64,000 nucleotides of DNA, taken from contig NC_042997.1 of assembly GCF_006345805.1 (NCBI RefSeq), positions 207,700,001 through 207,764,000 on the forward strand, in the 5' to 3' direction. Origin of the DNA: Octopus sinensis (Eukaryota). Each line of letters begins with the position of its first letter. Position 1 is the first letter of the stretch. The notes under the pieces were generated by a model that was given only the letters and a program-made list of their open reading frames with translations, was not told where the DNA came from and made no database searches. Below, piece after piece: positions 6,101 to 46,409 of this stretch. A program made the translations under genes and the position numbers.

Positions 6101-7062
6101 AGTCACTAACTACCAGTCTATGTTGTGGGGTGCATTCTTCGCCTGGGAAGGTTTTGGCATTTTTAAGCAGCCATCTTTCCCTTTTTCTGGCAAGGATGTA
6201 GTCGATTTGGCTAGTATGCCGGCCCGATCGGTAGGTGACCAGGTGGCTTGTTGGTTTCCTGAAGTTAGTGTTGCAGACCATAAGACTATTCGCATCGCAG
6301 AACTCCAGCAGCCTGGTTCCCTCCTCGTTGCGGGAACCATAACCGTAGCCTCCATGTACGCCATGGAAGCCCCCAGCATGTCGTCCAACATGCCCATTGA
6401 AATCACCAGCCACAAAGAGAAGGTCCTGTCGTTCGTCGATGAGGTGGTCTGCAGTAGGGTGTCATAGAAACTGTCTTTCTGTCCATCGGGTAGCCCTGGC
6501 TGAGGGGCATAGGCCGATATAATGGTTGCTAATCTATTATGAAGCACTATTCTAATCTTAAGTATTCTGTCACTTACTCTGATTACCTCAATTACTCTAT
6601 CTATCCATTTCTCAGTGATAAGTATACCCACGCCACCAACCCCGTCAGTGTTCCCTGCCCAGAAAATCTTGTACCTGTGTTCCTTGCCTGTGAGGACCCT
6701 AGCAGATCCTCCTCTCCACCCTATTTCTTGCATACAACATACATCAACACGTCTCCGTTCAAGCATCTCGACTATCTCGCCAGACCTACCTTTCAATGTG
6801 CCAACGTTGAGGGTGCCCACCCTGAGGGTGTGGGAGGTGTGGGCCTCTGAGACCCTGGGATGAGGGGCCGCAGTGTTATGTACCTGAAAAGAAAGCTTGC
6901 ATTTGCCAGATATCATACTGAGACTCTAGACTACAACCTGCATAAATTTCAAAGTTTTTGCGCTATATGATCACAATAAACCCTACATAGGGGTGCGGGG
7001 AGGGGTCAAGAAAGATAGAAAACAGAAACTTCCGGTTCTGGTGGGAGGGCGGGGTCACCTCC
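3135..7062 (-). mobile_element. Near full-length RTE-clade LINE (APE endonuclease + RT), frameshifted
   Basis: ORF 6110-6916 has TLNVGTL, VCCMQE and ISAYAPQ (APE). ORF 4167-5438 has FVDMEKAFDRV, GVHQGSVLSPLLF and YADDL (RT). The 3' UTR ends in a (CAT)n/(GAT)n tail at about 3135-3155. Confidence 0.95.
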
Positions 7063-12975: not shown

Positions 12976-13007
12976 ATATACATATATATCTTTTTTTCTC
13001 TTCTTAG

Positions 13008-13276
13008 CCACAGCATTTGGTGAAGGTGTTTATTTTGCCAAAGACATCAAATATTCTGCAAGTGATACCTATTCTACTCCTGACCATCACAGAATAAAGA
13101 GGATATACCAATGCAGTGTTCTTGTGGGAAAAGTGATACAAGGACAACACAGATTGAAAGTTTTACAGGAATCTTACAATTCTGCTGTTAATAATATTCA
13201 AACACCCAGTATTTATATTATTTTCCATGACTCTCAAGCATATCCTAATTATTTGATTACATTCTCTAATCAGTGA
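13008..13276 (+). CDS. PARP14-like: Gene 1 terminal exon: PARP catalytic domain, C-terminal half ((A)TAFGEGVYFAKDIKYSASDTYS...TPSIYIIFHDSQAYPNYLITFSNQ*)
   Basis: Acceptor ttttctcttcttag|CC. Phase 1 joins the exon ending at 249 to give RN-A-TAFGEGVYFA; 269 nt open to TGA. GxGVYFA, YS..DTYS, VLVG and AYPxYLITF motifs match PARP14/15. Not in the ORF track. Confidence 0.93.
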
Positions 13277-13395
13277 ATATAATTGGAATTCATAAAACAC
13301 ATATAATGTGAACAGGAATATATTTAACAGAAGAAAGACAAAGAAAATACAGGAAATTCTCTAATTCTAGGTGCAACCCCAGGGTCTTTTGTAAG

Positions 13396-13401
13396 AATAA
13401 A
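13396..13401 (+). terminator. Candidate polyadenylation signal for gene 1
   Basis: AATAAA 120 nt after the stop codon. Confidence 0.45.
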
Positions 13402-13504
13402 ACTATTCAATAGAATATTTTTCTATCATTCACACAGTGTTGTTGTCATTTTCTATCTTTTTTTACTTTAGAAATAATTATTGCTAAATATTAAAATACA
13501 TGAA

Positions 13505-14060
13505 GGTGCCTGGCTCAGTGGTTAAAGCATCAGGCTCACAATCATGAGGTAATGAGTTCAATTTCCAGGTCGGGTTGTGTGTTATGTTCTTGAGCAAGAC
13601 ACTTTCTTTCACAATGCTCCTTGTTCAGTGAGCTGTAGCAATGAGTTTCCACATCACTGGTGCCAAGCTGTATCGGCCCCTTTGCCTTTCCCTTGGATAA
13701 CATTGGTGGTGGGGAGAGAGGAGGCTGGTATGGATGAGTGACTACTGGTCTTCCATAAACAAACCTTGCCTGGACTTGTGCCTAGGAGGAGAACTTTCTA
13801 GGTGCAATCCCACGGTCATTCATGACTGAAAGGGGTTCTTTACCCTTTTAATATAGAATGCAGGCTGAAGGCGGCAAGCTAGCAGAAGCATTAGCATGCT
13901 GGGCAAAATGGTTAGCAGCATTCCCTCTGGCTTTACGTTCTGAGTTCAAATTCCATCAAGGTTGACTTTGCTCTTCATCTTTTCCGGGGTCTATAAAATA
14001 AGTACCTGTTGAACACTGGGGGTCAATATAATCAACTCACCCCTTACCTTGAAATTGCTG
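13505..14060 (+). mobile_element. Two further degenerate SINE copies of other families
   Basis: tRNA-like head ggctcagtggttaaagc...gagttcaatt at ~13512. Second element ggcggcaagctagcagaa...gagttcaaattcc...aataagtacc at ~13870, related to 24617-24790 and 36000-36290 (reverse). Confidence 0.65.
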
Positions 14061-15094: not shown

Positions 15095-15695
15095 GACAGG
15101 TGTAAGATAGTGTCAATGAGACAGTGTGTGGCAGAGTATATCTGAGAGAGTGTCAGACATTGCATCTGGGACAGTTCAAGGCAACGAAAATGAGACAGTG
15201 TGTGGCAGAGTATATCTGAGAGTGTCAGACATTGCATGTGGGACAGTTCAAGGCAACGAAAAATGAGACAGTGTGAGGTAGTGTCCATGAGACAGTGTGT
15301 GGGAGAGTATATCTGAGAGAGTGTCAGGCATTGCATGTGGGACAGTTCAAGGCAACGAAAGTGAGATAGTGTGAGGTAGTGTCAATGAGACAGTGTGTGG
15401 GAGAGTATATCTGAGAGAGTGTCAGACTTTGCATGTGGGACAGTTCAAGGCAACGAAAAGGAAATAGTGTGAGGTAGTGTATATGAGACAGTGTGTGGGA
15501 GAGTATATCTGAGAGAGTGTCAGACATTGCATGTGGGACAGTTTAAGGCAACGAAAGTGAGATAGTGTGAGGTAGTGTCAATGAGACAGTGTGTGGGATA
15601 GCATATCTGTGAGAGTGTCAGACATTGCATGTGGGACAGTTCAAGGCAACGAAAATGAGACAGTGTGAGGTAGGGTCAATGGGACAGTGTGTGGG
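15095..15695. repeat. Minisatellite with 74-bp and 98-bp unit variants
   Basis: tgagacagtgtgtgg recurs at 15117, 15191, 15288, 15386, 15484 and 15582. Confidence 0.92.
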
Positions 15696-15699
15696 AGAG

Positions 15700-17835
15700 C
15701 CGAATGTTGACCCAACAGAGGGACCAGCTATCCGAGTTGACAGTACCTTTGTTGATAAAGCAATTAAGAGTATGAAGACTGGGAAAGCCCCAATCCATCA
15801 GGAATCACTGCAGAGATGCTTGAAATATCTGGTGGTGTCGGCTATATTCTAGTCACCTGTATAGTTAACCAAGTGATACATGAGGGAGTCATACCCAATG
15901 ACTGGTGTAGCAGCACCATAGTCAACTGCTACAAAGGTAAAGGTGATGCATTAGATACTATAATTACAGATGTATCAAGTTGTTGGATCAGGTAATGAAG
16001 GTTACAGAGAGGGTTGTAACCCAACTAATTTGGGAGAGAGTTAGTTCAGACGAGATGCAGTTTGGGTTTGTGCCAGGGAAACGCGCGACTGATGCTATAT
16101 TTCTGGTAAGACAGCTGCAGGAGAAATACCTAGCCAAAGATAAACCTCTGTACCTGGCTTTTGTTGATATGGAGAAAGCCTTTGACAGGGTGCCCCAATC
16201 CTTTATCTGGTGGTCAATGAGGAAACTAGGGATAGATGAATGGTTAGTGAGAGCTGTGCAAGCCATGTACAGGGATGCTGTCAGTAAGATAAGGGTCGGC
16301 AATGAGTATAGTGAAGAATTCCTGGTAGAAGTAGAGGTTCACTAAGGATTGGTCTTCAGGCCCCTTTCATAGTCGTCCAGACAATAAAAGAGGAATTCAA
16401 GACAGTCTGCCCTTGGGAGCTTCTCTATGCTGATGACCTTGCTCTAATAGCTGACTCACTACCAGAACTAGAGAAGACATTTCAGGTGCGAAAGCAAGGT
16501 CTAAAAATTGAAGGGCCTTAGAGTCGATCTAGCAAAAACCAAAGCCTTAGTAAGAAGGCAGACATCCCATAAATCCCTTCAGATAGATGGCCCTGCTCAA
16601 TTTGTAGGAAATGTGTAGATAGAAACTCCATAAGATGTACCCAGTATAAGATATAGACACATGAGAGATGCAGCAATATCAAAGTGGTGGGGCTAACTGG
16701 GAAATTAGTTTTTGTGTGTGGCAGATGCTCAGAAGCAATAAACACTGAAGATGTGCAGAAAACAATTTACATCACATTCCAGGGTGAAAAACTAGAAGTA
16801 GTTGATAGCTTCTGTTAACTAGGTGACCAACCCAGTAGTAGGGGGTGAATGCTCTGAGAGCATAACTGTTAGAATAAGCATATCCTAGGCAAAGTTCAGA
16901 AAGCTCCTACCTCTGCTGGTAACAAAGGGTCTCTCACTCAGAGTGAAAGGCAGACTGTATGACGCATGCATGTGAACAGTCATGCTACATGGGATGTGAC
17001 TGCTGAGGACATGCGTAAGCTTGCAATAAATGAAGGTTGTATGCTCCACTGGATGTGTAATGTCAGTGTGCATACACAACAGAGTGTAAGTGGCCTAAGA
17101 GAAGAGTTGGACTTAAGAAGCATCAGATGTGGTGTGCAAGAGAGACGACTGGTATGGTCATGAGACACTAATGGATGAGGTCAGTTGTGTGAAAAAGTGT
17201 CACACTCTAACAGTGGAGGGAACCTGTGGAAGTAGTAGACCCAGGAAGACCTGAGATGAGGTGGTGAAGCATGACCTTCAAACGTTGGGCCTCACGGCGG
17301 TGATGACAAGTGACTGAGACCTTTGGAGATACGCTGTGCTTGAGAAGACCAGGCGTGCCAAGTGAGCCCGTAGCTATGGCCTATGTCAGTGTCACAGAAC
17401 TGGCCCATTTAAGAGTACCCTTCAATCATTGAGCATTATGCTTGAGAAAACTTGATGAGTTAAGTGAAATCGTTGACGTGGCAGATGCCAGTCCCGCGAC
17501 TGGTACCCATGCTGGTGGCATGTAAAAAGCATTATTCAAGTGTAGTTATTGCTTGTGCTGCCTGACTGGCTCCCGTGCCTGGTGCACATAAAAAGCACCC
17601 TTCGAGCATGGTTGATGCCAGTGCCACCTAACTGGCCTCCGCACCGGAGGCACATTAAAAGCACCCACTACACTCTTGGAGTGATTGACGTTAGGAAAGG
17701 CATCCAGCTGTAGAAACTCTGCCAGATCAGACTGGAGCCTGGTGCAGCCTCCTGGCTTGCCAGTCCCCAGACAAGCTGTCCAACCCATGCCAGCATGGAA
17801 AGCGGACGTTAAACGACGACGACGATGATGATGAT
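15700..17835 (+). mobile_element. 5'-truncated, degenerate RTE LINE with 3' tail
   Basis: RT motifs FVDMEKAFDRVP and YADDL (ctatgctgatgacc), stops and frameshifts, (GAT)n tail at ~17815. Confidence 0.92.
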
Positions 17836-18290
17836 GGTGTTGACTATATGCATATAATCTGACACCAAGTGTTTGTAGTAACCACGCTACACATGTATTA
17901 TGTATGTGTATATACCATATGGCTTCGTGCTTTAGGCATTCGGCTCACGATCGTAAGGTCTTGAGTTCGAATCCTGTTGGAGTGTTGTCCTTGAGCAAGA
18001 CACCTTATTTCATTTTGGCAATCGATCGGAATAAGTCTCAGACTCGTCAAGATTCGTTCGTTAGTTTCCGTATGCGTGACAGCACGTGCCGTCAACAGTA
18101 AACCCATTGAATATTATCACTAATACGGCTTTTTCGATGCACATACATATACACACTTGTCTTCTGTATGTATACATGTGGGATGTCGATAACAGATACA
18201 ATGTAGCATTCGAAGCTTGAGAAAAGCCTTGCCTATTTATAAGGTCATTATTCAGTTCATTCCAAGATTTCTTGCCAATAAAGAACCAGT

Positions 18291-18703: not shown

Positions 18704-19589
18704 TATTTTTGTATGTATGTATGTATAATAATGATAATAATCGTGTACAGTGCTCAGGTGCACTACAACTCATCTAAAGTGTATATATAATCAGGTGTAG
18801 TTTCGGCAGATTTCGGAAAGCATGAGGGCCTTAAAGGATGCGCCCTTTTGTGCGTGTATGTGTATGCGGCTAGGGCTCGCCCTTACCTCCTTCATTTGTA
18901 TATGTAAAATCTGTAAATTTCCAAGAAGAAAACGAGATCGACGTCGAAAAATCCGTATTAGTGACAATATTTCATGCCTGCAGTTGACAAGAACGTGCTG
19001 TCACGTAGACGGAAACAAACGAACGAATCTGGACAAGTCTCAGACTTATTCCGATTGATTGCCCTTATTTTAAGTCGGTCCATTTCAGTCAACTGGCAGA
19101 AAATGAGGAGAACCTGAGAAATACATTAAGGCTACGTTGATCGGATTAGCTGGAACCTCTGTCGGTTTCAACCGGCGGAGGGCTAGTTTTGTGTGTGTGT
19201 GTATACGCGTGTAGCCACAAATTGAAGGTTTGAGGCGGGGAGGGGTCGACACGCCAATCAGTGGCCACCACTGGGGAAAATCAGATAAGTTTCAGCGAGG
19301 CGATTGACAAAACACTGAGAGTGAAATCCTACCTTACTTTCACCGTGTATTTCCCCTTAAAACTTTCTTTCTTTCGTTATCAGTTACTTCCTTTTGTACA
19401 TATATACTTACATACACACACACATATATATATTAGAAGGTTTGGAGATGATGTACAGCTATTTTATATTAGAAGAAATGAGATACTCAGAAGTTCGGAT
19501 GGTTTTATAGCTACAGATATTCATTTGTATATTACATGTTTTTATACATCATGTAACATATATTAGCGCTTTCGTTCATTATATATATG

Positions 19590-19622: not shown

Positions 19623-19909
19623 ATACATATGAGAAGAATTTAGCAAACACCAGAGCGTAAGCGAGCAAAACAAATGAAAAGTTCTGGTGTTTGCTAAATT
19701 CTTCTTAAGAACATTTCTTAGTGGTAAGACCATAGCTGATCTACTTCTAGCATAAGGGTTGTCCACATAGCGGTCATCCCTCTCATGTGTATATAATACA
19801 ATTTACTGAACCTTCAGATTTTAATATACTAGACCACTGGTGTTAAATTGATGTTAATTAAATTAATATCCAATTTCTCACCCTCATTTTAAATTTATTT
19901 ATATATATA

Positions 19910-20032
19910 TTATGGTGGGGTGGGCCGGTTTATGGGGTTACTCTGGGTTTCTCGCTCATATCTTCAGACCCCAAACACTGCTGCTGGCCTGAGACCTCGC
20001 ATAACCCCATAAACCGGCCTAACCCACTATAA
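19910..20032. mobile_element. Small MITE with ~31-bp TIRs
   Basis: ttatggtggggtgggccggtttatggggtta ... taaccccataaaccggcctaacccactataa. Confidence 0.7.
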
Positions 20033-20092
20033 TTTTAACTGCTCTACATCTTTAGAGTTTGCTTTTCCTCTGGATTTATATATTTCTACAAA

Positions 20093-20169: not shown

Positions 20170-20229
20170 GTGTTTTCTTCCCATTTTGTTTGTTGTAAAT
20201 GATAATAATAAACTTTTATCACAAAGTGT

Positions 20230-20376
20230 TCGTGGAAGTAAATTATGTTAAGAGAGGACAGAGGGGAAGTGTTTTTCTAGGAAAAACACTGATGTCATAC
20301 AAAGTTGTTGTCAAACCAATGAACAGCTTAAAAACCACCAAGTTTCAGTTTCGCTCAGAGCTGTGACGAGGTAAGT
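20230..20376 (+). promoter_or_regulatory. Putative gene 2 promoter: ETS-like GGAAGT x2, GAS TTCTAGGAA (20275-20283), CCAAT (20316-20320), ISRE AGTTTCAGTTTCGC (20341-20354) overlapping Inr TCAGTT, then donor AG|GTAAGT (20370/20371)
   Basis: Exact consensus matches clustered in ~140 bp of non-repeat sequence between gene 1's 3' end and gene 2's ATG exon. The link to gene 2 is inferred, with no transcript evidence. Confidence 0.55.
20347..20370 (+). other. Putative non-coding exon 1 of gene 2
   Basis: Inr-like TCAGTT (A at 20347) and a perfect 5' splice site gag|gtaagt. The 5' end is a guess. Confidence 0.4.
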
Positions 20377-21074
20377 TTTTAAAGTTTTACATCTTCCTAA
20401 TTTAATTTCTTTGATCCCGTCTCTCCATTGCTTTACAAATACTTTACAAAGTCGCTTTCAATTCTTTTATGCTCCTCACCACAACTCGAGTTCAAATCTT
20501 ACCCGGATTTGCTGTTTTCATTCTCCTGGAGCAGTCATTTGGTAGACAACGCTCCCGTCTTAAATATTGGTATTAAACTTACGTATGAGGGCATAATTTC
20601 ATTTTCGGTCAGTACTTTTTTTTTAAATTCCAGCTGGTTGTTCGGCAATTTCCGCAAAGAATTTCTGTTTTTAATTTACTTTTATTTTCATGCCCGGCGG
20701 AAGGTGACATTTGCTTTGAAGTCGGTGAGGGAGATGAGAAGTGAAACACATGATAGCGCGCACCGCCCCCCACCGACTGACTTTGAACAGTGAAACACTC
20801 GCACAATGCTTGTATGTATTAAAGTATATGAAAGATAATGGAGTGTACGTGTGTCTGTGTCCTGCTTTATGTATTTGAACTCACACACAAACACGCCCAC
20901 CCGGCAATCTTTCATATACATTTACATACAAGAAGCTTCCTTCATAACCACATGGTTCCAGGTTCAGTCCCACGGCGTGGTACCTTGGACAGGTGCCTTC
21001 TACTATCGTTTCGGGCCGACCAAAGCCATGTAAGTGGATTTGGTAGACGGAAACGAAAAGAAGTCCGTCGTTTA

Positions 21075-21157
<83 letters not shown>

Positions 21158-21344
21158 CGGAGATGTACTCGCATAGCAAGTAATTTGATCTGAGATCGTG
21201 TGCTGGAACGAAAACAATTGCAGCGTGGAAGGTGTTTATAAGCCATTTAAGAAACACACAAAAGCCGTTCGATTCACTCCAACATTTAAGTTTAATTTGT
21301 CAAAATATTTTCGTTTGTTTGTATATATATATATATATATATAT

Positions 21345-22131
21345 ATAACCACTGAGTTATATGTTTTGTCATTTATTTTCTCTGTAAACTGATAACAAAA
21401 CTTGCATACGACTTAAACATATTTATTTCTGTCGTTTATCAGAACATCATAAAATGGGCGAAAGTAAAGCGAGTTCACACCACCGAACTAACCAGTTTGC
21501 GCAGTAAAAAAATCTGGTTAAAAGCAATCAAGAATTTACAAACGATATTGTCGGTGTGTGGGGTCCCTCTTGCCGCCCTTTTTTCCGAACCAAAATAAGG
21601 GATTTGCTGCATATTAGGAAGTCGGATCGCCGTCCAGGGGTTCCGCAAGAAGTTACAAAACTGCTAAAATCAGCAGTAATTTTTAATTCACCTGTGCATA
21701 AGACAATTAAATTATTGCACAGGGGTTCCTCGAGCCAGTGGAATGTTTCCTTGGGGTTCCGCTCCAGCAAAAAGTTTGAAAAGCACTGGTTTATACAGAC
21801 ACATAAATGAAATCACGTAAATACATATACACATACATTATATATACACACACAAAAATACCTGTACATACGTACACACACATACATACACCACATGCCA
21901 CGGGCGTAGTGGTTCAGAGCGCGGACTACTAAGCCCAAGATTTCGAGTTCGATTTCAGGCAGTGACCATAATAATAATAACAATAACTACAATAACATCG
22001 AAAAATACCTTAGGAATGAGAAGCCAGGTTCGAAATTTCCCCAAGACACCTGGAGAAGGTTGGAGGGTATATCAGCCGAAACGTTAACAACAAACAAAAT
22101 GAGGAACAAATATCCGTCAAATGTAAATAAC

Positions 22132-22185
<54 letters not shown>

Positions 22186-22915
22186 TTGTCTCCCCACCAC
22201 CATCGCTTCACAACCGGTGTTGGTATGTTTACATCCCCGTAACTTAGCGGTTCAGCAAAGGTGCCGATAGAATAAGTACTAGGCTTACAAAGAATAAGTC
22301 CTGGGATCGATTTCTTCGACTAAAGGCAGTGCTCCAGCATGAGCGCTGTTAAATGAATTAAATAAATACAAGAATATATACATGCATTTTTTGTATGTAT
22401 GTATGTGTGTGTACGTATGTACATGTATTTTTGTGTGTGTATATATAATGTATGTGTATATGTATTTACGTGATTTCATTTATGTGTCTGTATAAACCAG
22501 TGCTTTTCAAACTTTTTGCTGGAGCGGAACCCCAAGGAAACATTCCACTGGCTCGAGGAACCCCTGTGCAATAATTTAATTGTCTTATGCACAGGTGAAT
22601 TAAAAATTACTGCTGATTTTAGCAGTTTTGTAACTTCTTGCGGAACCCCTGGACGGCGATCCGACTTCCTAATATGCAGCAAATCCCTTATTTTGGTTCG
22701 GAAAAAAGGGTGACAATTTTGTAAATTCTTGATTGCTTTTAACCAGATTTTTTTACTGCGCAAACTGGTTAGTTCGGTGGTGTGAACTCGCTTTACTTTC
22801 GCCCATTTTATGATGTTCTGATAAACGACAGAAATAAATATGTTTAAGTCGTATGCAAGTTTTGTTATCAGTTTACAGAGAAAATAAATGACAAAACATA
22901 TAACTCAGTGGTTAT
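21345..22915. repeat. Large near-perfect inverted repeat (arms ~546 and ~520 bp, ~500-bp spacer)
   Basis: 21345-21890 is the reverse complement of 22396-22915 apart from one ~25-bp indel and a few substitutions. Each arm includes a hAT-MITE-like cagtgcttttcaaactttttg...gcggaacccc segment. Confidence 0.93.
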
Positions 22916-23094
22916 TTCGCCCCTCGTATCATTAACGACTGGTAAAGTAAGTTACCTCCCCATGTTTCTTAATATTCGCGAATATTTCCGTTTCTTTTAT
23001 TTTTTAGTATAAAATATTTTAAAATATTAAAAAAATTTTTTTGCATACTTCATTCATTTTGGATATATTTCCCATTTTCATATTAAAAAAAAAA

Positions 23095-23781
23095 GGCGAT
23101 CTATCGTTTGTAGTAGCACGTCTCCGTCGATGATTTCCGTAAAAAACTTTTATTTTTTTACATATGGGTTTGCGGGAACATTCGAAGTAATGAGAGCGAA
23201 AGAGACTAAGAGGAAGCGATTTTATGACGAGGGAATTTCTTTTTGAAGTTACCGAAGCATTGATGTACATGTGTGTGTGTGTTTGATGGGGTGTGGGAGA
23301 CAGACAGTATGTTGTGTAAGTGAAGTGCTTCTGTTAGTGTGTGTGAAGAGACAGAGAGAGTAATGTGTGAAAGAGAGAGATAACTGAAATTTTTTACTTG
23401 GTGTATGTGTATATGTATGTATACATGTATGTGTGTGTGTGTATGTATCTATGTATGTGTGTGTGTGTGTATGTATGTATGGCCGATTCAGTGTAATTTT
23501 TTATTCGGTGTATGTGTATATGTATGTCTGAATGTATGTGTGTGTGTGTAAGTATGTGTGTGTGTATGTATGTATGGCCGATTCATTGTAATTTTTTACT
23601 CGGTGTATGTGTATATGTGCTTCGGTAACTTCAGAAAGAAATTCCCTCGTCATAAAATCGCTTCCTCTTAGTCTCTTTCGCTCTCATTACTTCAAATGTT
23701 CCCGCAAGCCTATATGCAAAAAAATAAAGTTTTTTACGGAAATCATCGACGGAAACGTGCTACTACAAACGAAAGATCGCC
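23095..23781. mobile_element. Mutator-like MITE with ~170-bp TIRs flanked by A-runs
   Basis: ggcgatctatcgtttgtagtagcacg ... cgtgctactacaaacgaaagatcgcc; A10 on the left and A11 on the right, compatible with a 9-10-bp TSD. Confidence 0.8.
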
Positions 23782-25375
23782 AAAAAAAAAAATTAGGCAT
23801 CATTTTGTTGGAGAGGTGCGTTTCGAAAAGAACGTCAGCTGTTTTGGCTGCGATTAATTTTCTGTTTCGGGTTTTCTTGCTTTCATTTTGACATTTTTGG
23901 TGAAGCATGAAGGATCTTGACTTGACACATTTATTAGTTTTTTTATTCACTATTTTCTTCTTCTTTTTCCACCTCTTCTTCTTCCTCTTTTCCTTCTTCT
24001 TCTTCTTCTTCTCCTCCTTCTTCTTCTCCTCCTCCTCCTCCTCCTCCTTCTTCAGTGAGAGAACAGTGCATGCTATCAAAGTGACACTGGGGTAAAATAT
24101 ATGAAGCCCAGTGTACCCATCATAACTACCCGTCTGATAAGGGTACACTAGGCACATGCATCACAACCATATGTGCGCGACATGGTGATCTCATATCAAA
24201 ATAAACGTTGCATGACCTTGCAGGTGGAGGCTCAGAGTTTTCTTCAGGTCGAGTAGCCCATCCTGCTCAAAAGGTCCCTGAATAAGGGTTGTTTAAGGAT
24301 GTTGAATGAAACACCCATGTTCCGAAGGTGAGTTAGCCAAACCCCAAAGAATCCCTCTCAACACATGGCTATGATGCTCCCCCACTACGTCTGCTCGTGA
24401 TCAGAGATGCACATTTCGGTAGCCACTAAGGGACATGCTCAACTGCTTAAGGTCAAACAACTGACAAGCAAATCTGTGGTATTGAGCAGAATATTTGCTG
24501 TAGCCCATCTTTTTATACCAAGACAAAACAATGTACATGATAACACTTCCAATCAGTTAAGATCAGAAGCCATGAGAGCCACTGCCTGTGACTTATTATT
24601 ATTACTATTATTATGAAAGTGGCGAGCTGGCAGAATCGTTAGCATGCTGGATGAAATGCGTAACGGTATTTCACCCATTGTGACATTCTTAGTTCAAATT
24701 CCGGTGAGGTCAACTTTGCCTTTCATCCTTTTGGAGGTCGATAAATTAAGTACCAGTTACGCACTGGGGGTCAATGTAATCGACTACTTCCCCTCCCTAG
24801 AAATTTGAGGCATTGTGCCTTTAGTAGAAATGATTATTGTTGTTATTATTATTATAGGTAGTGGGTAGCGATTTTCTCCACTACTTCAGGGAGTTACGAT
24901 CCTGCCTGACACGAGTCTCGGGCTCAGCTGGCTCCGGCTGACAGTACCCAGTATGGGCCCCTATCCAGGGTTACGGAAAGGAGACAACTTTCAAAGAAAT
25001 CCGGAGTGGAGCCCCATAGGTGGTTTAGTGTTTGACTTGACACTCTTCCGGCAGCTCCTGCAACCAAGCCGGTGCCAAACGTAATGCTCTGCATTCCTTT
25101 GGACTACATCAGCAAGGTCGAGAGAGGAATCCTGACGATTGGGCTACCCAGGATTTTCTTACATCTAGCCCAGGCCTGCGCAAAATTGGAGAGGAAACTG
25201 GAGAGGACATGAAATGTAAAAACCAGACTGGATTAGTTTATGCGCAACTCCATTGTCTCCCGAGACAAAAGGGTGTCAACAATTATTATTATTATTATCA
25301 TCACTGAGGTCAATGAAATTGATCCTTCCCCCTCACCAAAATGGCTGCCCTTACGGCAAAATTTGAAACCATTAA

Positions 25376-25431
<56 letters not shown>

Positions 25432-25549
25432 TGTAGTTTTATTTTTATCACATGCTTTCACTTCACTCCCCAGCACAGCTCTGTCTTATGCATTTGTCTG
25501 AATGTTCTTTCATCATACCTAATGCGCCTATTATGATAGGAATTGTTCC

Positions 25550-25960
25550 TGGTTTCAGATGCCACATTCAAGTTACCTCTTTTCTAGATCTTTGTTTTTT
25601 TTGAAAGTTTCTCTGTTTCTAGTAGAGATGAGATGTTACAGAATAACTGAAGACGTGAGGAGGGGAAGAAGCAAGGGCAGTAGTGAAATAGCCTCATGTA
25701 ATACAACACAGACATTTAAATTGATTGGGTTTTTCTAAGGATGTCAGCAGTACTTGCCAACACAATCTTATGGATTTCTCTGAGACATGGTTCTTCTGGG
25801 ATCTTATCTAGATGTTTCTGACATCCCATTTTTTTTTATTATACCTAGGGCACCTACAATAACAGGAACAGTTCTCGTTTTAAGATTCCACATCCTTTCT
25901 ATTTCAATTAACAGCTCCTTATATTTACTTAATTTGTCAAATTCCTTGACCGATGCCAGA
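25550..25960 (-). mobile_element. R4/Dong-clade LINE 3' fragment (end of restriction-like endonuclease)
   Basis: Minus frame MWNLKTRTVPVIVGALGIIKK resembles the R4 RLE C-terminus. Confidence 0.6.
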
Positions 25961-27409
25961 CTCCCCTGGCACGTAAAAAGCACCCACTACACTCACGGAG
26001 TGGTTGGCGTTAGGAAGGGCATCCAGCTGTAGAAACACTGCCAGATCAGACTGGGCCTGGTGCAGCCTTCTGGCTTCCCAGACCCCAGTTGAACCATCCA
26101 ACCCATGCTAGTATGGAAAACGGACGTTAAATGATGATGACGATGATATATTTTTATCAGTGGGAACACTTGCATCTATTAGTCCTAAAGTATTTTCTTC
26201 TCTCTCTTTAATAATTATGTCTGGTTGATTTGCATGGATCATTCTGTTAGTGAAATCCCAGAGGATAGTGACATTTTTATCCTTAATGACTAATGGTTAA
26301 GGTCCCATTTCCTAGGTTCTGTTGAGCCACCTTACTTGTATATAAGGGAGTGTTTTCAGTATACTTGCGTCTTTGGTTCCAGTCCTTATAAGGGCTAACC
26401 TCTGACCACAGAGCTACTCAACATGTTCCAGTCACAACGACAGACGATCAGCCACGACGACGCTAATGTACACCTGCAACAGAAAACCAATTTCTATCTC
26501 CGCCGCCGTCGTCACCATCATTGTACCAACTTCAAGTCGCCATCACCATCGTCCACTTCAGACATGTACACACCAACTTCACAGATTCAACTCATACTGT
26601 TAGTGTGAAAATCTCACCACGGAAAAACAGTTGCAGTATATATATCTGAAAGAATATCTATATCAAGAGAAAAATAACCAAGCAAAACATGATATGAAGA
26701 CGCTATAGTAAACCAAGCGACAGACATAATGTCATCGCCAACATCGTCTCTATCTACGAAGATTTAACTTGTACACAAGATAACTACAGATTCAACTCCT
26801 GCTGTTAGGTGAAAATCTCACCACGGAAAAACAGTTGCAGTATATATATCTGAAAGAATATCTATATCAAGAGAAAGATAAGAACAACAAGTGATTCAAC
26901 TAATCTCAGCTCCGAGACACAACATCTTGATATTGAAGTCTTACACTTCGTGTACCTCATGAACAGTAAATCTATTATTAACTCTATGCTCTGTACCTAC
27001 TATGCCACACGCATTCACCCTTATTGTATCTGTCACACACACGAACACACAGACACAAACACGTGTTGTACGCACACATACACAATGCTTGCTAGCCCTC
27101 ACAACCTTCTAACATTAACCCATTGTAAATAAAATAATATCTATCCCTCAAACAGTGGAACGGCTTGTCGTCAATTCATCTAAATTCTGTTGGCACTGCA
27201 TTGTATAAAATTGTATTTATGGCTTATCTTATTTCGCTAGGAATGCGACCGTGTGACTTACCTATGTCACCAACCTCAACATACGGTCGTATTCCCTACA
27301 ATTCCATTATATGTATACCCCAGCACTTTATGTCTATCTTTGTATTATTCCCCTCATCCTTCACACTTGTGGCAAATAAATGAAAGAATTATTATTATTA
27401 TTATTATTA

Positions 27410-28120
27410 AAACCAAAGTGGTTGTTAGTAAGAAGGAAGATAAAACTCTCTTTCCTTCAGGTAAATGGTGCCGCTCCATAAGAAGGAAAGGAGTTGGAAG
27501 AAATTCCTTGTACTGTATCCAGTGTAAACTGTGGGCAGTGGAATCACAGGTAGATTAAGAGATAAAATTGTCTTTGTATGTGGCAGATGTGCAGGAACAA
27601 TAAGCACTAAGAGCACACGGGACTTAGATTCTCTCAAAAACCCAGGAGGTTCTCTTGAGGTTGTAGATAGTTTCTGTTACCTAGGTGACCAAATTAGCAA
27701 TGGTGGAGGATGCTCTGAAAATATTGTTTCTAGAATAAGAATTGGGTGGGTGAAGTTCAGAGAACTATTACCTCTGTTAGCAACAAAAAGGACCCTCTCT
27801 CTCAGAGTGAAAGGTAGACTATATGGTGCTTGTGTGCGAATGGCTATACTCCATGGTAGTGAGACATGGGCTCTGAATACAGAAGACGTGTAGACTGGAG
27901 AGAAATTAAGGTGGTATGCACCGTTGGATGTGCAACAACAGTGCACATGTACGGCAAAGTGCAAATGTGTTGAGAGAAAAGTTGGGCATATCAAATGTAG
28001 TATGCAAGAGAGAAGACTACTTTGGTTTGGACATGTGATGTACATGAATGAGGACAGCTGCATAAAGAAGTGCTGATCACTAAAAATGGATGGTACCTGT
28101 GGAAGAGGGAGACCCTAGTT
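27410..28120 (+). mobile_element. Degenerate RTE LINE 3' fragment
   Basis: KIVFVCGRC, VVDSFCYLGD, KFRELLPLL and LHGSETW motifs shared with the other RTE copies. Confidence 0.85.
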
Positions 28121-28129
28121 CTTCTGTCT

Positions 28130-29280
28130 AGCTTTGCTAGTTCACTTTTTATCACAAAAGCTGCTAAGTAAAAATACTGCCCAAGTATTTACAGCCTTCA
28201 CTAGATTCCGACCATTTAGTTTTGACTTCATTAGCTTCCTCCTCCTTCTCAATTTTCCTTTTCATTTCTGTAGTCAGATCCTAATACTCCAAGATACTTA
28301 TAACTCTCTCCTTCTTTTAATGATTTTTATATCTGGCCATTAGGTAATTGGATGCCTTCTGGTCCTGGGCCCTTCCAATTTAGCATTCTTCCTAACACAT
28401 TACTCATTAATGCGCTAGTTAATCTTAGATCTAGCTACTTCTTCCTTTGTTTTCTTTAACTACCCTGCATCTCCTTTTGATTGTCTGGCTTACACCAAAT
28501 ATTACTCCAGAACATTCTAGCTTCTTCTGCATTAGGTTCCTCATCTTCAGTACTTTCTTCTCCACTATTTATTTGGTTATAAAATCTCTTCTGGTCTGTC
28601 TCAAGTCATTTATTCTGTTGATACTGATCTGTTTGTTTTCTGATATCTGGAGAGCTTGCCTGCTATTGTTGTTACACATTGTTTCAAATCTTTTATTATT
28701 GTCCCAAATCCTTCTTTCTCTTTGACTAAGTATCTTTTCCCAAGAGAAGATTTGAATCTTGTGTTTCCTATCTTGTTCAGTTTCCAGGTTTCTATTCTAC
28801 TCAGATCTTGTCTTAAAGTCTTCTCCTTATTTTGTAATTTCCTTTTTCACACTTGCTTTTTTCTAATTTGTCCTTGTGGAATATCTAATCTTTTAGTAAC
28901 TACTACTCCTCCGGCAGAGATCAATGAGTGTCTTCTGTATTTTAGTATCTATCCTACTGATAACAGAATCTACTTTCTTAGTCATATCTAGCAACATTCT
29001 TCTGTTGGTACCCTTTAAAGAGAGCAATCTTTTTCTTACTTCTTTACTCATGAATTCCTGCAACACATCTAAAATCTTCTGATCTTCCTCACTTAAATCA
29101 CTGGTGCCAGTTGTCCCTTCCTTATTGGTAGCACTATTGTTATTTTTTTCTTTAGGTTCTTCTTTGGTTTGAGCTGTATCTCTTATGTTGTTGTTTGTCT
29201 TTCCCACTGCCTGGTCTTTCTTTTCCAGTTCTCTCGTGATCCCTTCCACCTCCAATTCTGTCATCCACTTTCTTCTATAA
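28130..29280 (-). mobile_element. R4/Dong-like LINE N-terminal ORF fragment
   Basis: Minus frames KRLLSLKGTNRRMLL...KVDSVISRIDT and GVVVTKRL...RKLQNKEKTLRQDLSRI, typical of the R4 region upstream of RT. Confidence 0.6.
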
Positions 29281-29376
29281 ACATTAGCTTGATCAACTAA
29301 CTTGTGTGCTCAGTCACTTTAAACAAACCCTTCTCTACCCAAAGCGTTGAAATCCCTTTTCTATAGCCCTTTCTTT

Positions 29377-29990
29377 TAGTTATTTTTTTTGGCTCAAAAA
29401 GCAAAAACCAAGGCCATGTAGGGGGGCATGGAGTTATGTACAGGGTGGTGTTCATGTAAAGAGTTCAGGCCACTTGAGGTCAAGGGAGACTTTGAACTGA
29501 GCGGTCGTCGGCATCTTCACCATCTCGTCTGGCAGCTTATTCCACGGATCCGCAACCCGGGCGGAGAAAGCCCCTCTCCTTCGATTGAGATGAAATCGTC
29601 GCAGATAGAGCTTTTCGGAATGACCCCGCAGCCGACGCTCTGGAGCAGGAGTGAAGAACAGCTCTTTCGAGAGGTTACACTTTCCACTTATGATGTTGTG
29701 AGCAAGAATGAGATCACCACGGCGTCGTCGTTTTTCTAGAGAATAAAGGTCGAGCGTCTTCAGCCTTTCTTCATAAGACAAATTCTTGAGACCAAGAACC
29801 ATGCGGGTAGCCAGCTTCTGGACTCTTTCGAGATGCTGTATGTCTTTGAGGAGATAAGGAGAAGAGGCTTGAATCCCGTACTCCAATATGGGTCTCACCA
29901 GCGTGACATAGAGCGGTAGGAATATGGCTGCTGTGAGCATTCCGAATGACCGTCGAATCAAGAACAGAATTCCGCGTGCTTGTTATGAGG
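29377..29990 (-). mobile_element. 5'-truncated CR1-clade LINE, ORF2 C-terminus intact
   Basis: ORF 29452-29961 has LVRPILEY, LERVQKLATR, SYEERLK, RRRGDLI, RGHSEKL and RVADPWNKLP, followed by a short 3' UTR. Confidence 0.9.
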
Positions 29991-30541
29991 TTTGAACTAA
30001 GTCTTTTCTTGTATCAGTGTTTGTATTGTGTGTTGTGTGTGTAGCGTAGTTGTGTTCTTCTGATGGTTACTGGGCCTCTTTTGTACATGTTGTTGGGCTT
30101 TGTTCATTTTATTGTGCATTTCCTGTATGAGTTTATTCTTGTGTGCTTTTTGGGAGTGTTGCACTGTAGTAGGACTCAAAAACACACACGTAAACCTTAT
30201 TACCTTGCACAATGTGGTCAATTAACCTTTTAGCGTTTAGACTGGCCAAATCTGGCCCAATCATATAACTTGTTTTATATTTAAACTGGAAAGATCCAGC
30301 CTTTGTAACACTTACCCTACAATGTCATGCTAAAAAGATAATCACGTTATCACAATGTTTAAGCTATGAGATAATGGCATCGATTCAAAACAATGTGAAT
30401 AGACAAGCATTGCATTTGGCTGAGGAATCTGAATGGTAAAGGGGGGAGATGGATTCCTGTCTGAATTCTGCCCAATTGTTTGATTCTCTCTTAACTGTAA
30501 TTTATAATTTACTTTGCAGAGCAAAAATACATGTTGAAATC

Positions 30542-30554
30542 ATGGAAAAGAGAG
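30542..30554 (+). CDS. PARP14-like: Gene 2 putative start exon (exon 30520-30554; ATG GAA AAG AGA G, MEKR)
   Basis: Acceptor tttactttgcag|A at 30519/30520, strong-context aatcATGG, donor AG|gtattt. Phase 1 joins 37980 to give MEKR-D-TPSPNP. Short exon, inferred. Confidence 0.6.
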
Positions 30555-32461: not shown

Positions 32462-35400
32462 TGTGTGCTCCACCCACACTTAACACGGAAACTTCTCGCA
32501 CGCCCTACCACAACAAACCAAACTACATCTCTTCCTCACATCTCCTCCTTCATGCACTAGGCTTACCTCCCACTCCCCAATCCTGTCCACCTGGCCCTGT
32601 CTCACTGCTATCCCCTAGCCCCAGATCTGTGTGCTCCACCCACACCTAACAAGAAAACTTCTCGCACGCCCTACCACAACAAACCAAACTACATCTCTTC
32701 CTCACATCTCCTCCTTCATGCACTAGGCTTACCTCCCACTCCCCAATCCTGTCCTCCTGGCCCTGTCTCACTGCTATTCCCTAGCCCCTGATCTGTGTTC
32801 TCCACCCACACTTAACACGAAAACTTCTCGCACGCCCTACCACAACAAACCAAACTACATCTCTTCCTCACATCTCCTCCTTCATGCTCTAGGCTTACCT
32901 CCCACTCCCCAGTCCTGTCCTCCTGGCCCTGTCTCACTGCTATACCCTAGCCCCTGATCTGTGTGCTCCACCCACACCTAACAAGAAAACTTCTCGCATG
33001 CCCTACCACAACAAACCAAACTACATCTCTTCCTCACATCTCCTCCTTCATGCACTAGGCTTACCTCCCACTCCCCAATCCTGTCCTCCTGGCCCTGTCT
33101 CACTGCTATTCCCTAGCCCCTGATCTGTGTTCTCCACCCACACTTAACACGAAAACTTCTCGCACGCCCTACCACAACAAACCAAACTACATCTCTTCCT
33201 CACATCTCCTCCTTCATGCTCTAGGCTTACCTCCCACTCCCCAGTCCTGTCCTCCTGGCCCTGTCTCACTGCTATACCCTAGCCCCTGATCTGTGTGCTC
33301 CACCCACACCTAACAAGAAAACTTCTCGCATGCCCTACCACAACAAACCAAACTACATCTCTTCCTCACATCTCCTCCTTCATGCACTAGGCTTACCTCC
33401 CACTCCCCAATCCTGTCCACCTGGCCCTGTCTCACTGCTATCCCCTAGCCCCAGATCTGTGTGCTCCACCCACACCTAACAAGAAAACTTCTCGCATGCC
33501 CTACCCCAACAAACCAAACTACATCTCTTCCTCACATCTCCTCCTTCATGCACTAGGCTTACCTCCCACTCCCCAATACTGTCCTCCTGGCCCTGTCTCA
33601 CTGCTATCCCCTAGCTCCTGATCTGTGTGCTCCACCCACACTTAACACGAAAACTTCTCGCACGCCCTACCACAACAAACCCAACTACATCTCTTCCTCA
33701 CATCTCCTCCTTCATGCACTAGGCTTACCTCCCACTCCCCAGTCCTGTCCTCCTGGCCCTGTCTCACTGCGATCCCCTAGCCCCTGATCTGTGTGCTCCA
33801 CCCACACTTAACACGAAAACTTCTCGCACGCCCTACCACAACAAACCAAACTACATCTCTTCCTCACATCTCCTCCTTCATGCACTAGGCTTACCTCCCA
33901 CTCCCCAGTCCTGTCCTCCTGGCCCTGTCTCACTGCTATCCCCTAGCCCCTGATCTGTGTGCTCCACCCACACTTAACACGAAAACTTCTCGCACGCCCT
34001 ACCACCACAAACCAAACTACATCTCTTCCTCACATCTCCTCCTTCATGCACTAGGCTTACCTCCCACTCTCCAGTCCTGTCCTCCTGGCCCTGTCTCACT
34101 GCTATCCCCTAGCCCCAGATCTGTGTTCTCCACCCACATTTAACACGAAAACTTCTCGCACGCCCTACCACAACAAACCAAACTACATCTCTTCCTCACA
34201 TCTCCTCCTTCATGCTCTAGGCTTACCTCCCACTCCCCAATCCTGTCCTCCTGGCCCTGTCTCACTGCTATCCCCTAGCCCCAGATCTGTGTGCTCCACC
34301 CACACTTAACACCAAAACTTCTCGCACGCCCTGCCACGACAAACCTAACTACATCTCTTCCTCACATCTCCTCCTTCATGCACTAGGCTTACCTCCCACT
34401 CTCCGGTCCTGTCCTCCTGGCCCTGTCTCACTGCTATCCCCTAGCCCCAGATCTGTGTGCTCCACCCACACTTAACAAGAAAACTTCTCGCACGCCCTAC
34501 CACAACAAACCAAACTACATCTCTTCCTCACATCTCCTCCTTCATGCACTAGGCTTACCTCCCACTCCCCAGTCCTGTCCTCCTGGCCCTGTCTCACTGC
34601 TATCCCCTAGCCCCAGATCTGTGTGCTCCACCCACACCTAACAAGAAAACTTCTCGCACGCCCTACCACAACAAACCAAACTACATCTCTTCCTCACATC
34701 TCCTCCTTCATGCACTAGGCTTACCTCCCACTCCCCAATACTGTCCTCCTGGCCCTGTCTCACTGCTATCCCCTAGCTCCTGATCTGTGTGCTCCACCCA
34801 CACTTAACACGAAAACTTCTCGCACGCCCTACCACAACAAACCCAACTACATCTCTTCCTCACATCTCCTCCTTCATGCACTAGGCTTACCTCCCACTCC
34901 CCAGTCCTGTCCTCCTGGCCCTGTCTCACTGCTATCCCCTAGCCCCAGATCTGTGTGCTCCACCCACACCTAACAAGAAAACTTCTCGCATGCCCTACCA
35001 CAACAAACCCAACTACATCTCTTCCTCACATCTCCTCCTTCATGCACTAGGCTTACCTCCCACTCCCCAATCCTGTTCTCCTGGCCCTGTCTCACTGCTA
35101 TCCCCTAGCCCCAGATCTGTGTGATCCACCCACACCTAACAAGAAAACTTCTCGCATGCCCTACCACAACAAACCAAACTACATCTCTTCCTCACATCTC
35201 CTCCTTCATGCACTAGGCTTACCTCCCACTCCCCAATACTGTCCTCCTGGCCCTGTCTCACTGCTATCCCCTAGCCCCAGATCTGTGTGATCCACCCACA
35301 CCTAACAAGAAAACTTCTCGCATGCCCTACCACAACAAACCAAACTACATCTCTTCCTCACATCTCCTCCTTCATGCACTAGGCTTACCTCCCACTCCCC
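32462..35400. repeat. 166-bp tandem satellite, ~17.7 copies, in gene 2 intron 2
   Basis: Unit starts at 32462 and 32628 ... 35284 (=17x166 later); highly homogeneous, C-rich + strand. Confidence 0.97.
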
Positions 35401-37395: not shown

Positions 37396-37979
37396 TGATA
37401 ATATATATATCATCGCCATCATCTTCTTTGTCATTTAACAGCTTTTTTCCCTGCTGGCATGGGTTGGATGGTCTGACCAGGGCTAGCCAGAAAGAAGACC
37501 GCACCAAACATCTGTGTCTGTTTTGACATGGTTTTTATGGCTGGATGCTCTTCCCAACACCAACCACCCCACAGAGTGGATTGACTGCTTTTTATGTGAC
37601 ACCAGCGCAGGCAAGGTCAGTTTTGGCAAGGTTTCTACTGTTGGATGCCCTTCCAAACACCAACCACTTTACAGTGTGGAGTGGATGCTTTTTAAGTGGC
37701 ACCAGCACAGACAGGGTCACCAAGTACCTTGCAAGACAAGAATCCTTTGAGAGGAGAGGGGGCATTGCAGGAGGGGTTCTTGTGTCAGATGATAAAATGT
37801 TAGAGTGAGATGGAGAGATAGAAACATGTGCCTTGCTGAGGAGGAGGTACAAGGTTACCTGGCCTGAGAGATAGGGGAAGAGGGAGAGAGAGAGATAACA
37901 AGAAATAGAACAGAAACATGTGTACAGTTGTAAAGGAGAGTTGTTATACATATATATATTGCTATTTGTTTATTTTCAG

Positions 37980-38116
37980 ATACCCCATCACCAAACCCAT
38001 CCTTTCCTGGTTCACTACAGAAATTATCCTCCATGTTACCCAGAACTACTGTGACATCCAGAGAAAATGCTGGCATCAAAATACAACTATTGATTGATTC
38101 AATTTCTAATGCATCT
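37980..38116 (+). CDS. PARP14-like: Gene 2 exon 3: linker + first strands of macrodomain 1 (D TPSPNPSFPG...GIKIQLLIDSISNAS)
   Basis: tttattttcag|AT ... TCT|gtgagt; 137 nt, phase 1 to 0, open frame; paralogue at 50628. Confidence 0.85.

Positions 38117-46382: not shown

Positions 46383-46409
<27 letters not shown>

What the first reader, a model, noticed from the sequence alone, without database searches (positions are those of the whole stretch)
20230..20376. GAS + ISRE 'interferon-stimulated gene' promoter grammar in front of gene 2
Seen: TTCTAGGAA (TTCN3GAA) at 20275-20283, inside a perfect 10-bp palindrome agtgtttttc-tag-gaaaaacact (20268-20290). AGTTTCAGTTTCGC at 20341-20354 is an exact AGTTTCNNTTTCNY ISRE. 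Also two GGAAGT ETS cores, TGATGTCA and CCAAT, a perfect AG|GTAAGT donor 16 nt after the ISRE, and a second TTTCATTTTC at 20597-20606. Established: STAT binds GAS and IRFs bind ISRE; molluscs have STAT and IRF genes but no recognised interferon. Inference: an IRF/STAT-driven promoter. Caveats: the ISRE overlaps an invertebrate Inr (TCAGTT), and such motifs arise by chance in AT-rich DNA.
Basis: partly seen in the sequence, partly recalled or inferred. Interest (0 to 1): 0.7.

Follow-up and report, generated by a model that had tools for sequence, protein, structure and literature searches.

The report
STAT/IRF-like sites before octopus PARP14-like gene
A short, conserved stretch in front of an octopus relative of the interferon-induced gene PARP14 really does carry textbook STAT and IRF binding motifs next to a used splice site, but nothing here shows that it is the start of transcription or that those factors bind it.

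Summary
I add a second GAS-like site, TTCGTGGAA, at 20229-20237.

- **Chance:** the exact ISRE occurs once in 64 kb (0.13 expected). An ISRE with two GAS sites within 150 bp occurs once in 365 kb of cluster sequence. The smaller motifs (ETS, CCAAT, TGATGTCA, Inr) occur at chance frequency.
- **The gene:** "gene 2" is an Octopus PARP14-like gene with two Macro domains and one PARP domain.
- **The splice:** the acceptor at 30520 and ATG at 30542 match NCBI and O. vulgaris gene models. One O. vulgaris paralogue model reads ...RVVTR|AKIPVEIM across the same junction, so the 20370-to-30520 splice is plausible.
- **Conservation:** the block 20201-20468 is single-copy and recurs upstream of exon 2 in one paralogue at 84% identity. 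That copy keeps both GAS cores and the donor, but half of the ISRE has decayed. Retention is no better than neutral (P about 0.09).
- **Transcription start:** unproven. The annotated O. vulgaris orthologue starts 1.3 kb upstream and skips this exon. Other models use two further 5' exons.

Verdict: a plausible but untested IRF/STAT-type promoter or 5'-exon element, and a new member of a known kind. Interest is moderate.

The parts
20201..20468 (+). Single-copy conserved block: about 170 bp of upstream sequence, a short non-coding exon and the first 98 nt of the intron
   Evidence: It has no other copy in the window. It is 84% identical to L003 3449-3718, upstream of exon 2 of the paralogue that encodes P0009. 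Apart from the exon 2 surroundings, it is the only unique colinear match in 20 kb.
20229..20237 (.). GAS-like site 1, TTCGTGGAA; it overlaps the ETS-like GGAAGT at 20234-20239
   Evidence: The paralogue has TTCTTGGAA, so the core is kept and only the spacer changed.
20268..20290 (.). Perfect palindrome with 10-bp arms and a 3-bp spacer, centred on GAS-like site 2, TTCTAGGAA (20275-20283)
   Evidence: 0.1 expected per 64 kb for spacer 3. The paralogue has GTGTTTTTTCTGGGAAAAACAC, so the core is kept. The stretch 20263-20317 is 93% identical to the paralogue.
20290..20297 (.). TGATGTCA, a CRE/AP-1-like octamer
   Evidence: It is identical in the paralogue. The octamer occurs at chance frequency in the window: 4 found against 4.4 expected.
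20341..20354 (-). ISRE: GCGAAACTGAAACT on the minus strand, AGTTTCAGTTTCGC on the plus strand
Evidence: The paralogue has AGTTTCACTTTTGC, so only one AANNGAAA half-site remains. It is also a tandem (AGTTTC)2 repeat.
20345..20351 (+). Initiator-like TCAGTTT (YYANWYY) with the A at 20347, overlapping the ISRE
   Evidence: Read directly from the sequence. The paralogue has TCACTTT, which still fits YYANWYY. TCAGTT occurs at chance frequency in the window.
20347..20370 (+). Non-coding 5' exon. The 3' end is defined by the donor ACGAG|GTAAGT. The 5' end is unknown, and 20347 is only the initiator-based guess.
   Evidence: The donor is perfect and is kept in the paralogue. The in-frame reading ...SLRAVTR|AKIHVEIMEKR parallels P0024's ...RVVTR|AKIPVEIMAEK and the L003 frame ...LLLRVVTR. 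The frame from 20252 to 20370 has no ATG and no stop.
30520..30554 (+). Exon 2, 35 nt: acceptor ...tttgcag|A, main ATG at 30542 (MEKR), out-of-frame upstream ATG at 30531
   Evidence: The P0004 gene start (L001 position 10001) maps to window 30542. P0014, P0009, P0024 and P0038 all read RAKI(H/P)VEIM across this acceptor. Sequence read; note that the slice printed runs one base to the right of these coordinates.
37980..38116 (+). Exon 3 (DTPSPNPSFPGS...DSISNAS)
24299..24327 (+). Alternative or cassette 5' exon, ATGTTGAATGAAACACCCATGTTCCGAAG|GTGAGT
   Evidence: It is identical to the exon that gives P0014 its N-terminus MLNETPMFR, joined to exon 2.
18974..19072 (+). Alternative upstream 5' exon used by the O. 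vulgaris orthologue model P0038 (MPAVDKNV...LIL|RAKIH)
   Evidence: The match is 33 of 33 amino acids. The exon lies in the right arm of the inverted repeat 18017-18137 / 18944-19063. The donor in the window reads AAG|TC, which is non-canonical. This may be a GG-to-G homopolymer error like those seen.

Best explanation
The block 20201-20370 is the proximal promoter plus a short non-coding leader exon of an octopus PARP14-like gene (two Macro domains and a PARP catalytic domain).

**Proposed mechanism**
1. STAT dimers bind the two TTCN3GAA palindromes at 20229-20237 and 20275-20283.
2. An IRF binds GAAACTGAAACT (20341-20354, minus strand), which overlaps the initiator.
3. Immune signalling activates both factors: RIG-I-like-receptor (RLR) or cGAS-STING signalling to IRF, and cytokine/JAK signalling to STAT.
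4. Transcription starts at or just upstream of TCAGTTT (A at 20347).
5. The leader is spliced from 20370 to 30520, onto exon 2, which carries the ATG at 30542.

**Shown here**
- The motifs are present.
- The gene is a PARP14-like macro-PARP.
- The exon 2 acceptor and ATG match gene models.
- The donor is conserved in a paralogue.
- The same junction reading appears in a relative's annotated model.
- The block is a conserved single-copy island.

**Inferred**
- That this is a transcription start rather than an internal 5'-UTR exon or an intronic enhancer.
- That STAT and IRF bind.
- That the gene is inducible.
For: - The motifs are exact, and the cluster is unique in 365 kb.
- The gene is PARP14-like. 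P0004 and P0038 are 90%-cluster mates, and P0038 has two Macro domains and a PARP domain.
- Exon 2 and its ATG are confirmed.
- P0024 reads ...RVVTR|AKIPVEIMAEK, matching the translation of the block's donor-proximal codons in L003 and the window.
- The block recurs 13.7 kb upstream of exon 2 in the paralogue L003. It is the only unique alignable sequence there apart from exon 2.
- Both GAS cores, TGATGTCA, the initiator and the donor are kept. The substitutions fall in degenerate positions: 3 of 9 changed, against 1 of 23 constrained positions.
- Literature:
  - Oyster IRF2 and IRF8 activate ISRE reporters (PMC5557890).
  - An oyster receptor activates ISRE and GAS reporters (cited in PMC8218723).
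  - O. vulgaris haemocytes express IRF and STAT transcripts (PMC4199593).
  - Aplysia PARP14, PARP12 and DTX3L fall in immune co-expression modules that hold IRF1, IRF8 and RIG-I (PARP14 in a neighbouring module) (PMC8195618).
  - Mammalian PARP14 is interferon-induced (PMC12505956, PMC11251048).
Against: - No transcript 5' end was available.
- The O. vulgaris orthologue model P0038 starts at window-equivalent 18974 and joins exon 2 directly, skipping this exon.
- P0014 and P0009 use other 5' exons.
- P0024's gene range is 225 kb, so in that model the homologous exon may be internal.
- The ISRE ends only 16 nt before the donor. It must therefore lie at the start site or inside the transcript.
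- The ISRE coincides with an initiator and with a simple hexamer duplication.
- In L003 the second GAAA is lost.
- Amino-acid comparison hints that P0024's copy lacks one hexamer (H-P-N-L-A-R against H-Q-V-S-V-S-L-R). This inference comes from protein sequence only.
- Motif retention is not significant (P = 0.087; Fisher 0.057).
- The intron part is 90% identical to the paralogue, at least as conserved as the promoter part at 79%.
- The gene copy itself carries a frameshift in O. sinensis assemblies.
Confidence: 0.38

Rival explanations
1. The block is a genuine promoter or leader exon, but the GAS and ISRE matches are incidental. The 'ISRE' would be an initiator (TCAGTTT) embedded in a slipped (AGTTTC)2 repeat. 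The palindrome would be bound by some other dimeric factor, or by none.
For: - The initiator overlaps the ISRE and is kept in the paralogue, while the ISRE's second half is not.
- TTCN3GAA is not enriched in the window.
- The smaller motifs occur at chance frequency.
- Motif retention is not significant.
- No such cluster was found upstream of the Argonauta relative.
Against: - Two GAS cores plus an exact 12-of-12 ISRE within 130 bp occur once in 365 kb.
- The substitutions fall only in degenerate positions of both GAS sites.
- The downstream gene family is a classic IRF/STAT target in vertebrates.
Confidence: 0.3
2. The block is not the transcription start. It is an internal or alternative 5'-UTR exon, possibly with an intronic enhancer. 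The main start lies upstream, at or before 18974 in a repeat-derived exon, or at another alternative exon.
For: - P0038, the orthologue model, starts at window-equivalent 18974-19072 and joins exon 2.
- P0014's exon corresponds to window 24299-24327.
- P0024's model spans 225 kb, which implies exons far upstream of the homologous exon.
- The O. vulgaris annotation used Iso-Seq, RNA-seq and PASA (PMC10700109).
Against: - In the window the 18974-19072 exon has a non-canonical donor (AAG|TC) and sits in an inverted-repeat arm.
- These N-terminal extensions are the kind produced by taking the longest ORF or by ab initio prediction.
- There is no good polypyrimidine acceptor upstream of the ISRE.
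- Models that start at MEKR (P0004, P0008) leave the 5' UTR unseen.
Confidence: 0.22
3. The block has no function. It is alignable between the two paralogues only because the duplication is recent and transposon insertions happened to miss it.
For: - Identity is 84%, within the range seen around exon 2 (84-92%).
- The intron part is at least as conserved as the promoter part.
- The gene copy carries a frameshift.
Against: - It is one of only two unique colinear islands in about 20 kb of otherwise replaced sequence.
- The perfect donor is kept.
- The junction reading is present in an annotated model.
Confidence: 0.1

Closest known systems
Vertebrate interferon-stimulated gene promoters that combine ISRE and GAS (for example GBP1, and the PARP9-DTX3L / PARP14 locus; recalled from memory for the cis-elements, with PMC12505956 and PMC11251048 for interferon induction of PARP14)
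   Same: The consensus sequences match (GAAANNGAAACT and TTCN3GAA). They are clustered within about 130 bp at the 5' end of a macro-domain PARP gene.
   Different: No interferon or ISGF3 is known in cephalopods. The ISRE sits at or inside the leader exon rather than 50-150 bp upstream of the start site. Binding and induction are untested.
Mollusc IRF / JAK-STAT interferon-like pathway described in oyster (PMC5557890, PMC8218723)
   Same: Mollusc IRFs activate ISRE-driven reporters, and an oyster cytokine receptor activates ISRE and GAS reporters. That makes the proposed trans-factors plausible.
   Different: In the passages I read, those studies used mammalian reporter elements rather than native mollusc promoters. 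The work was on a bivalve, not a cephalopod.
Invertebrate STAT sites (Drosophila STAT92E binds TTCN3GAA; recalled from memory)
   Same: The palindromic core and 3-bp spacing are the same.
   Different: There are no data for cephalopod STAT. Here the palindrome extends to 10-bp arms, longer than a STAT core needs.
Initiator-driven TATA-less core promoters
   Same: TCAGTTT fits YYANWYY and the arthropod TCAGTY, and it is kept in the paralogue.
   Different: This reading would give a leader exon of only about 24 nt. No start-site data exist.

Membership tests
ISRE (IRF / ISGF3 response element) | Sequence match to A/GNGAAANNGAAACT | tested here: met
GCGAAACTGAAACT on the minus strand at 20341-20354.
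ISRE (IRF / ISGF3 response element) | Kept in paralogous or orthologous promoters | tested here: not met
   The only paralogous copy recovered (L003) has AGTTTCACTTTTGC. One GAAA is lost and a single AANNGAAA half-site remains.
ISRE (IRF / ISGF3 response element) | Bound by IRF and confers inducibility | not testable with these tools
   This needs EMSA, DAP-seq or reporter assays.
GAS (STAT-binding palindrome) | TTCN3GAA | tested here: met
   There are two sites, at 20229-20237 and 20275-20283.
GAS (STAT-binding palindrome) | Core kept in a paralogue | tested here: met
   TTCTTGGAA and TTCTGGGAA in L003. Only the spacer bases changed. The result is not statistically decisive at 84% background identity.
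GAS (STAT-binding palindrome) | Bound by STAT | not testable with these tools
   This needs binding assays with octopus STAT.
Core promoter with first exon | Transcription start site within or next to the block | not testable with these tools
   No transcript 5' ends were accessible. Annotated relatives show at least four different 5' exons.
Core promoter with first exon | Donor at 20370 spliced to the acceptor at 30520 | tested here: inconclusive
   The acceptor is confirmed by five gene models. The donor is perfect and conserved. P0024 reads ...RVVTR|AKIPVEIM, as predicted for this junction in a paralogue. There is no direct transcript for this locus.
PARP14-like macro-PARP gene (homologue of vertebrate interferon-stimulated genes) | Macro domain(s) plus a PARP catalytic domain | tested here: met
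   The orthologue P0038 has PF01661 twice and PF00644 once. The window exons match it.

The most novel reading that the evidence does not exclude
An octopus-specific, tandemly expanded family of macro-domain PARP genes is driven by a compact IRF- and STAT-responsive promoter. That would mean the regulatory link between IRF/STAT and PARP14-type genes predates vertebrate interferon, and that cephalopods run an interferon-independent 'ISG-like' programme.
Probability: 0.22. Interest if true: 0.6.

Novelty: new member of a known kind. Interest (0 to 1): 0.38.

Why it matters
If the sites work, this would be a native cis-regulatory element tying cephalopod IRF/STAT signalling to an antiviral-type effector family. 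In the papers I read, mollusc work used mammalian ISRE and GAS reporters instead. It would give a short, testable fragment of about 170 bp for asking whether the 'interferon-stimulated' regulon is older than interferon. It would also help in studying a gene cluster that is duplicating and decaying quickly. If the sites do not work, this is an ordinary leader exon with coincidental motifs.

Tried and rejected
**Looking for more copies of the promoter**
- I fetched nine loci around relatives:
  - O. sinensis: L001-L004, L006 and L008.
  - O. bimaculoides: L005.
  - Argonauta: L007.
  - O. vulgaris: L009.
- Only L003 held a copy of the block.
- The promoter of the closest paralogue, P0008/P0014, lies beyond both fetches. 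It is about 3 kb past the 10-kb flank in L004, and just past the contig end in L002.
- The regions downstream of P0008, P0016 and P0030 are filled with different transposons.
- P0002 and P0024 gave no DNA because their gene ranges are too long. P0001 is not on record.

**Looking for transcripts**
- A protein search with the in-frame translation of exon 1, exon 2 and exon 3, meant to catch transcript-derived ORFs, found nothing.
- Exact-match scans of metagenome contigs for the spliced junction and for the GAS2 block found nothing.

**Other checks**
- Rfam and tRNA scans of the window were empty.
- A heat-shock element is rejected for the palindrome, because the spacing is 3 bp and not 2.
- I found no match to the NF-kB site consensus by eye.
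- A transposon origin for the block is rejected: it is single-copy in about 430 kb of repeat-rich sequence.
- The CCAAT box carries no weight. It lies in an indel relative to the paralogue, and the pentamer is under-represented in the window rather than enriched.

Full report
**What the window is.** The window is repeat-rich eukaryotic DNA. An Octopus sinensis contig (L001, GCA_006345805.1 VCDQ01000074.1) is 97-99.9% identical to it. Stop-to-stop translations and a protein search show tandem PARP14-like genes on the plus strand.
- Gene 1 ends at 13273.
- Gene 2 has macro-domain exons near 38.4, 40.6, 51.1 and 52.2 kb. Its PARP catalytic exon lies at 61.2 kb.
- Its O. vulgaris orthologue P0038 (670 aa) shares a 90% cluster with the O. 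sinensis model P0004. P0038 has two Macro domains and one PARP domain.
- The gene behind the finding is therefore a relative of the vertebrate interferon-induced macro-PARPs (PMC12505956, PMC11251048, PMC4038475).

**The observation.** I add a second TTCN3GAA, TTCGTGGAA, at 20229-20237.
- The full ISRE pattern occurs once in 64 kb against 0.13 expected.
- GAS-type sites are not enriched overall (14 found, 18.9 expected), but two lie 46 bp apart here.
- A strict ISRE with two GAS sites within 150 bp occurs once in 365 kb of window plus related loci.
- The 10+3+10 perfect palindrome is one of two non-microsatellite palindromes of that size in the window. About 0.1 is expected for spacer 3.
- TGATGTCA, CCAAT, GGAAGT, TCAGTT and AGGTAAGT occur at chance frequency or below.
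- The cluster was picked after the fact, so these figures are descriptive only.

**The exon structure.** Exon 2 is 30520-30554, with acceptor tttgcag|A, main ATG at 30542 and an out-of-frame upstream ATG at 30531. The start of the NCBI model P0004 maps exactly to 30542.

Five models read RAKI(H/P)VEIM across that acceptor from an upstream exon, but the upstream exons differ.
- P0024, an O. vulgaris paralogue, reads ...RVVTR|AKIPVEIMAEK. This is what the block's donor predicts: the window frame gives ...SLRAVTR and the paralogue L003 gives ...LLLRVVTR.
- P0014 uses an exon identical to window 24299-24327.
- P0009 uses L003 6001-6008.
- P0038, the orthologue of gene 2, begins MPAVDKNV...LIL. This matches window 18974-19072 at 33 of 33 residues, 1.3 kb upstream of the finding.
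  - That exon lies in one arm of an inverted repeat.
  - In the window its donor is non-canonical. This could be a homopolymer error like those.
- P0039 uses yet another exon, downstream of exon 2.

The O. vulgaris annotation combined Iso-Seq, RNA-seq, PASA/TransDecoder and ab initio predictors (PMC10700109). These 5' exons may therefore be real isoforms or artefacts of taking the longest ORF. The donor at 20370 is supported as a used splice site. Its status as the first exon is not settled.

**Conservation.** The block 20201-20468 has no other copy in the window. Among nine fetched loci it recurs once, at L003 3449-3718. That is 13.7 kb upstream of exon 2 of the P0009 gene, against 10.15 kb in the window. 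In the 20 kb around it, only this block and the exon 2 surroundings align uniquely. The rest is replaced by repeats.

The paralogous copy shows the following.
- It keeps both GAS cores, with changes only in the N3 spacers.
- It keeps the GAS2 palindrome, TGATGTCA, an initiator-type heptamer and the donor.
- The second half of the ISRE reads TTTT, which leaves one AANNGAAA half-site.
- CCAAT lies in an indel.

Overall identity is 84%: 79% for the promoter part, 87% for the ISRE and exon, and 90% for the intron start. Of 23 constrained motif positions, 22 are kept (P = 0.087). Three of nine degenerate positions changed (Fisher p = 0.057). This is suggestive but not decisive, because the duplication is young. 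The 10 kb upstream of an Argonauta relative has no comparable cluster, but its 5' end is unknown.

**How it most likely works.** The best reading is a compact proximal promoter with a short leader exon. STAT dimers would bind the two palindromes. An IRF would bind the element that overlaps the initiator. The start would be near 20347, with a splice from 20370 to 30520.

The trans-factors are plausible.
- Oyster IRFs activate ISRE reporters (PMC5557890).
- An oyster receptor activates ISRE and GAS reporters (cited in PMC8218723).
- O. vulgaris haemocytes express IRF and STAT transcripts (PMC4199593).
- Aplysia PARP14, PARP12 and DTX3L fall in immune co-expression modules that also hold IRF1, IRF8 and RIG-I; PARP14 itself is in a neighbouring module (PMC8195618).

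Several points weigh against this reading.
- The ISRE ends 16 nt before the donor, so it must sit at the start site or inside the transcript.
- It is also an initiator and a slipped hexamer repeat.
- The orthologue model skips this exon.
- Binding and induction are untested.

I put 0.38 on this reading. The rivals are:
- a real promoter with incidental motifs (0.30);
- an internal or alternative 5'-UTR exon, or an enhancer, with the start elsewhere (0.22);
- a functionless relic (0.10).

**Comparison and novelty.** The grammar is that of vertebrate ISG promoters and of invertebrate STAT sites. The proposed link to mollusc IRF/STAT signalling extends published oyster work to a native cephalopod element. 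It is a new member of a known kind, of moderate interest. It would matter more if induction and binding were shown.

Noticed in passing
window 32462-35402: A 166-bp satellite array in intron 2 of gene 2: 17.7 copies, 96% matches, with strong strand bias towards C. The array is about twice as long in the O. sinensis loci L001 and L004.
   Followed up: partly
window 37958-39350 and 50606-52780: An intragenic tandem duplication of about 12.6 kb gives gene 2 two macro-domain units. The close paralogue P0008 (L004, L002) has one unit.
   Followed up: partly
window about 52184-52190 and 40700-40725: A +1 frameshift in the macro-2 exon (CCTTACATTAGG against CCTATATTAGG) is present in both the window and L001. 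This is why NCBI splits the gene into P0004 (380 aa) and a P0016-like model. The O. vulgaris orthologue P0038 is intact (670 aa). The window also has homopolymer contractions in the macro-1 exon that L001 lacks, which suggests assembly indel errors.
   Followed up: partly
window 18017-18137 and 18944-19063: An inverted repeat with arms of about 120 bp (84% identical), about 800 bp apart, looks like the ends of a DNA-transposon-like element. The right arm holds the 5' exon used by the O. vulgaris orthologue model.
   Followed up: partly
window 19909-19940 and 20002-20033: A 32-bp inverted repeat (91% identical) forms a foldback of about 125 bp, MITE-like. It lies 170 bp upstream of the conserved block, just before a (TA)n(TG)n microsatellite.
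   Followed up: no
window 21345-21500 and 22760-22915: A perfect 156-bp inverted duplicate in intron 1. Related copies in both orientations lie at the start of L002.
   Followed up: no
window 12979-13599, compared with L004 and L002: The last PARP catalytic exon differs from its closest relatives far more at the protein level (about 85% identity by eye) than the 300 bp just after the stop codon does at the DNA level (98%). This fits fast evolution or gene conversion in the catalytic domain, as reported for vertebrate macro-PARPs.
   Followed up: no
window 30531-30533: An upstream ATG in exon 2 is out of frame with the main ATG and would open an overlapping uORF of about 33 codons. The paralogue L003 lacks it (CTG).
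   Followed up: no
window 4167-6916 (minus strand), 62576-63970, 15600-17300, 41000-42700, 46300-47100: LINE-type retrotransposon copies and fragments with endonuclease and reverse-transcriptase ORFs. Very AT-rich microsatellite blocks lie at 10.6-12.0 kb and 56.4-58.2 kb.
   Followed up: no
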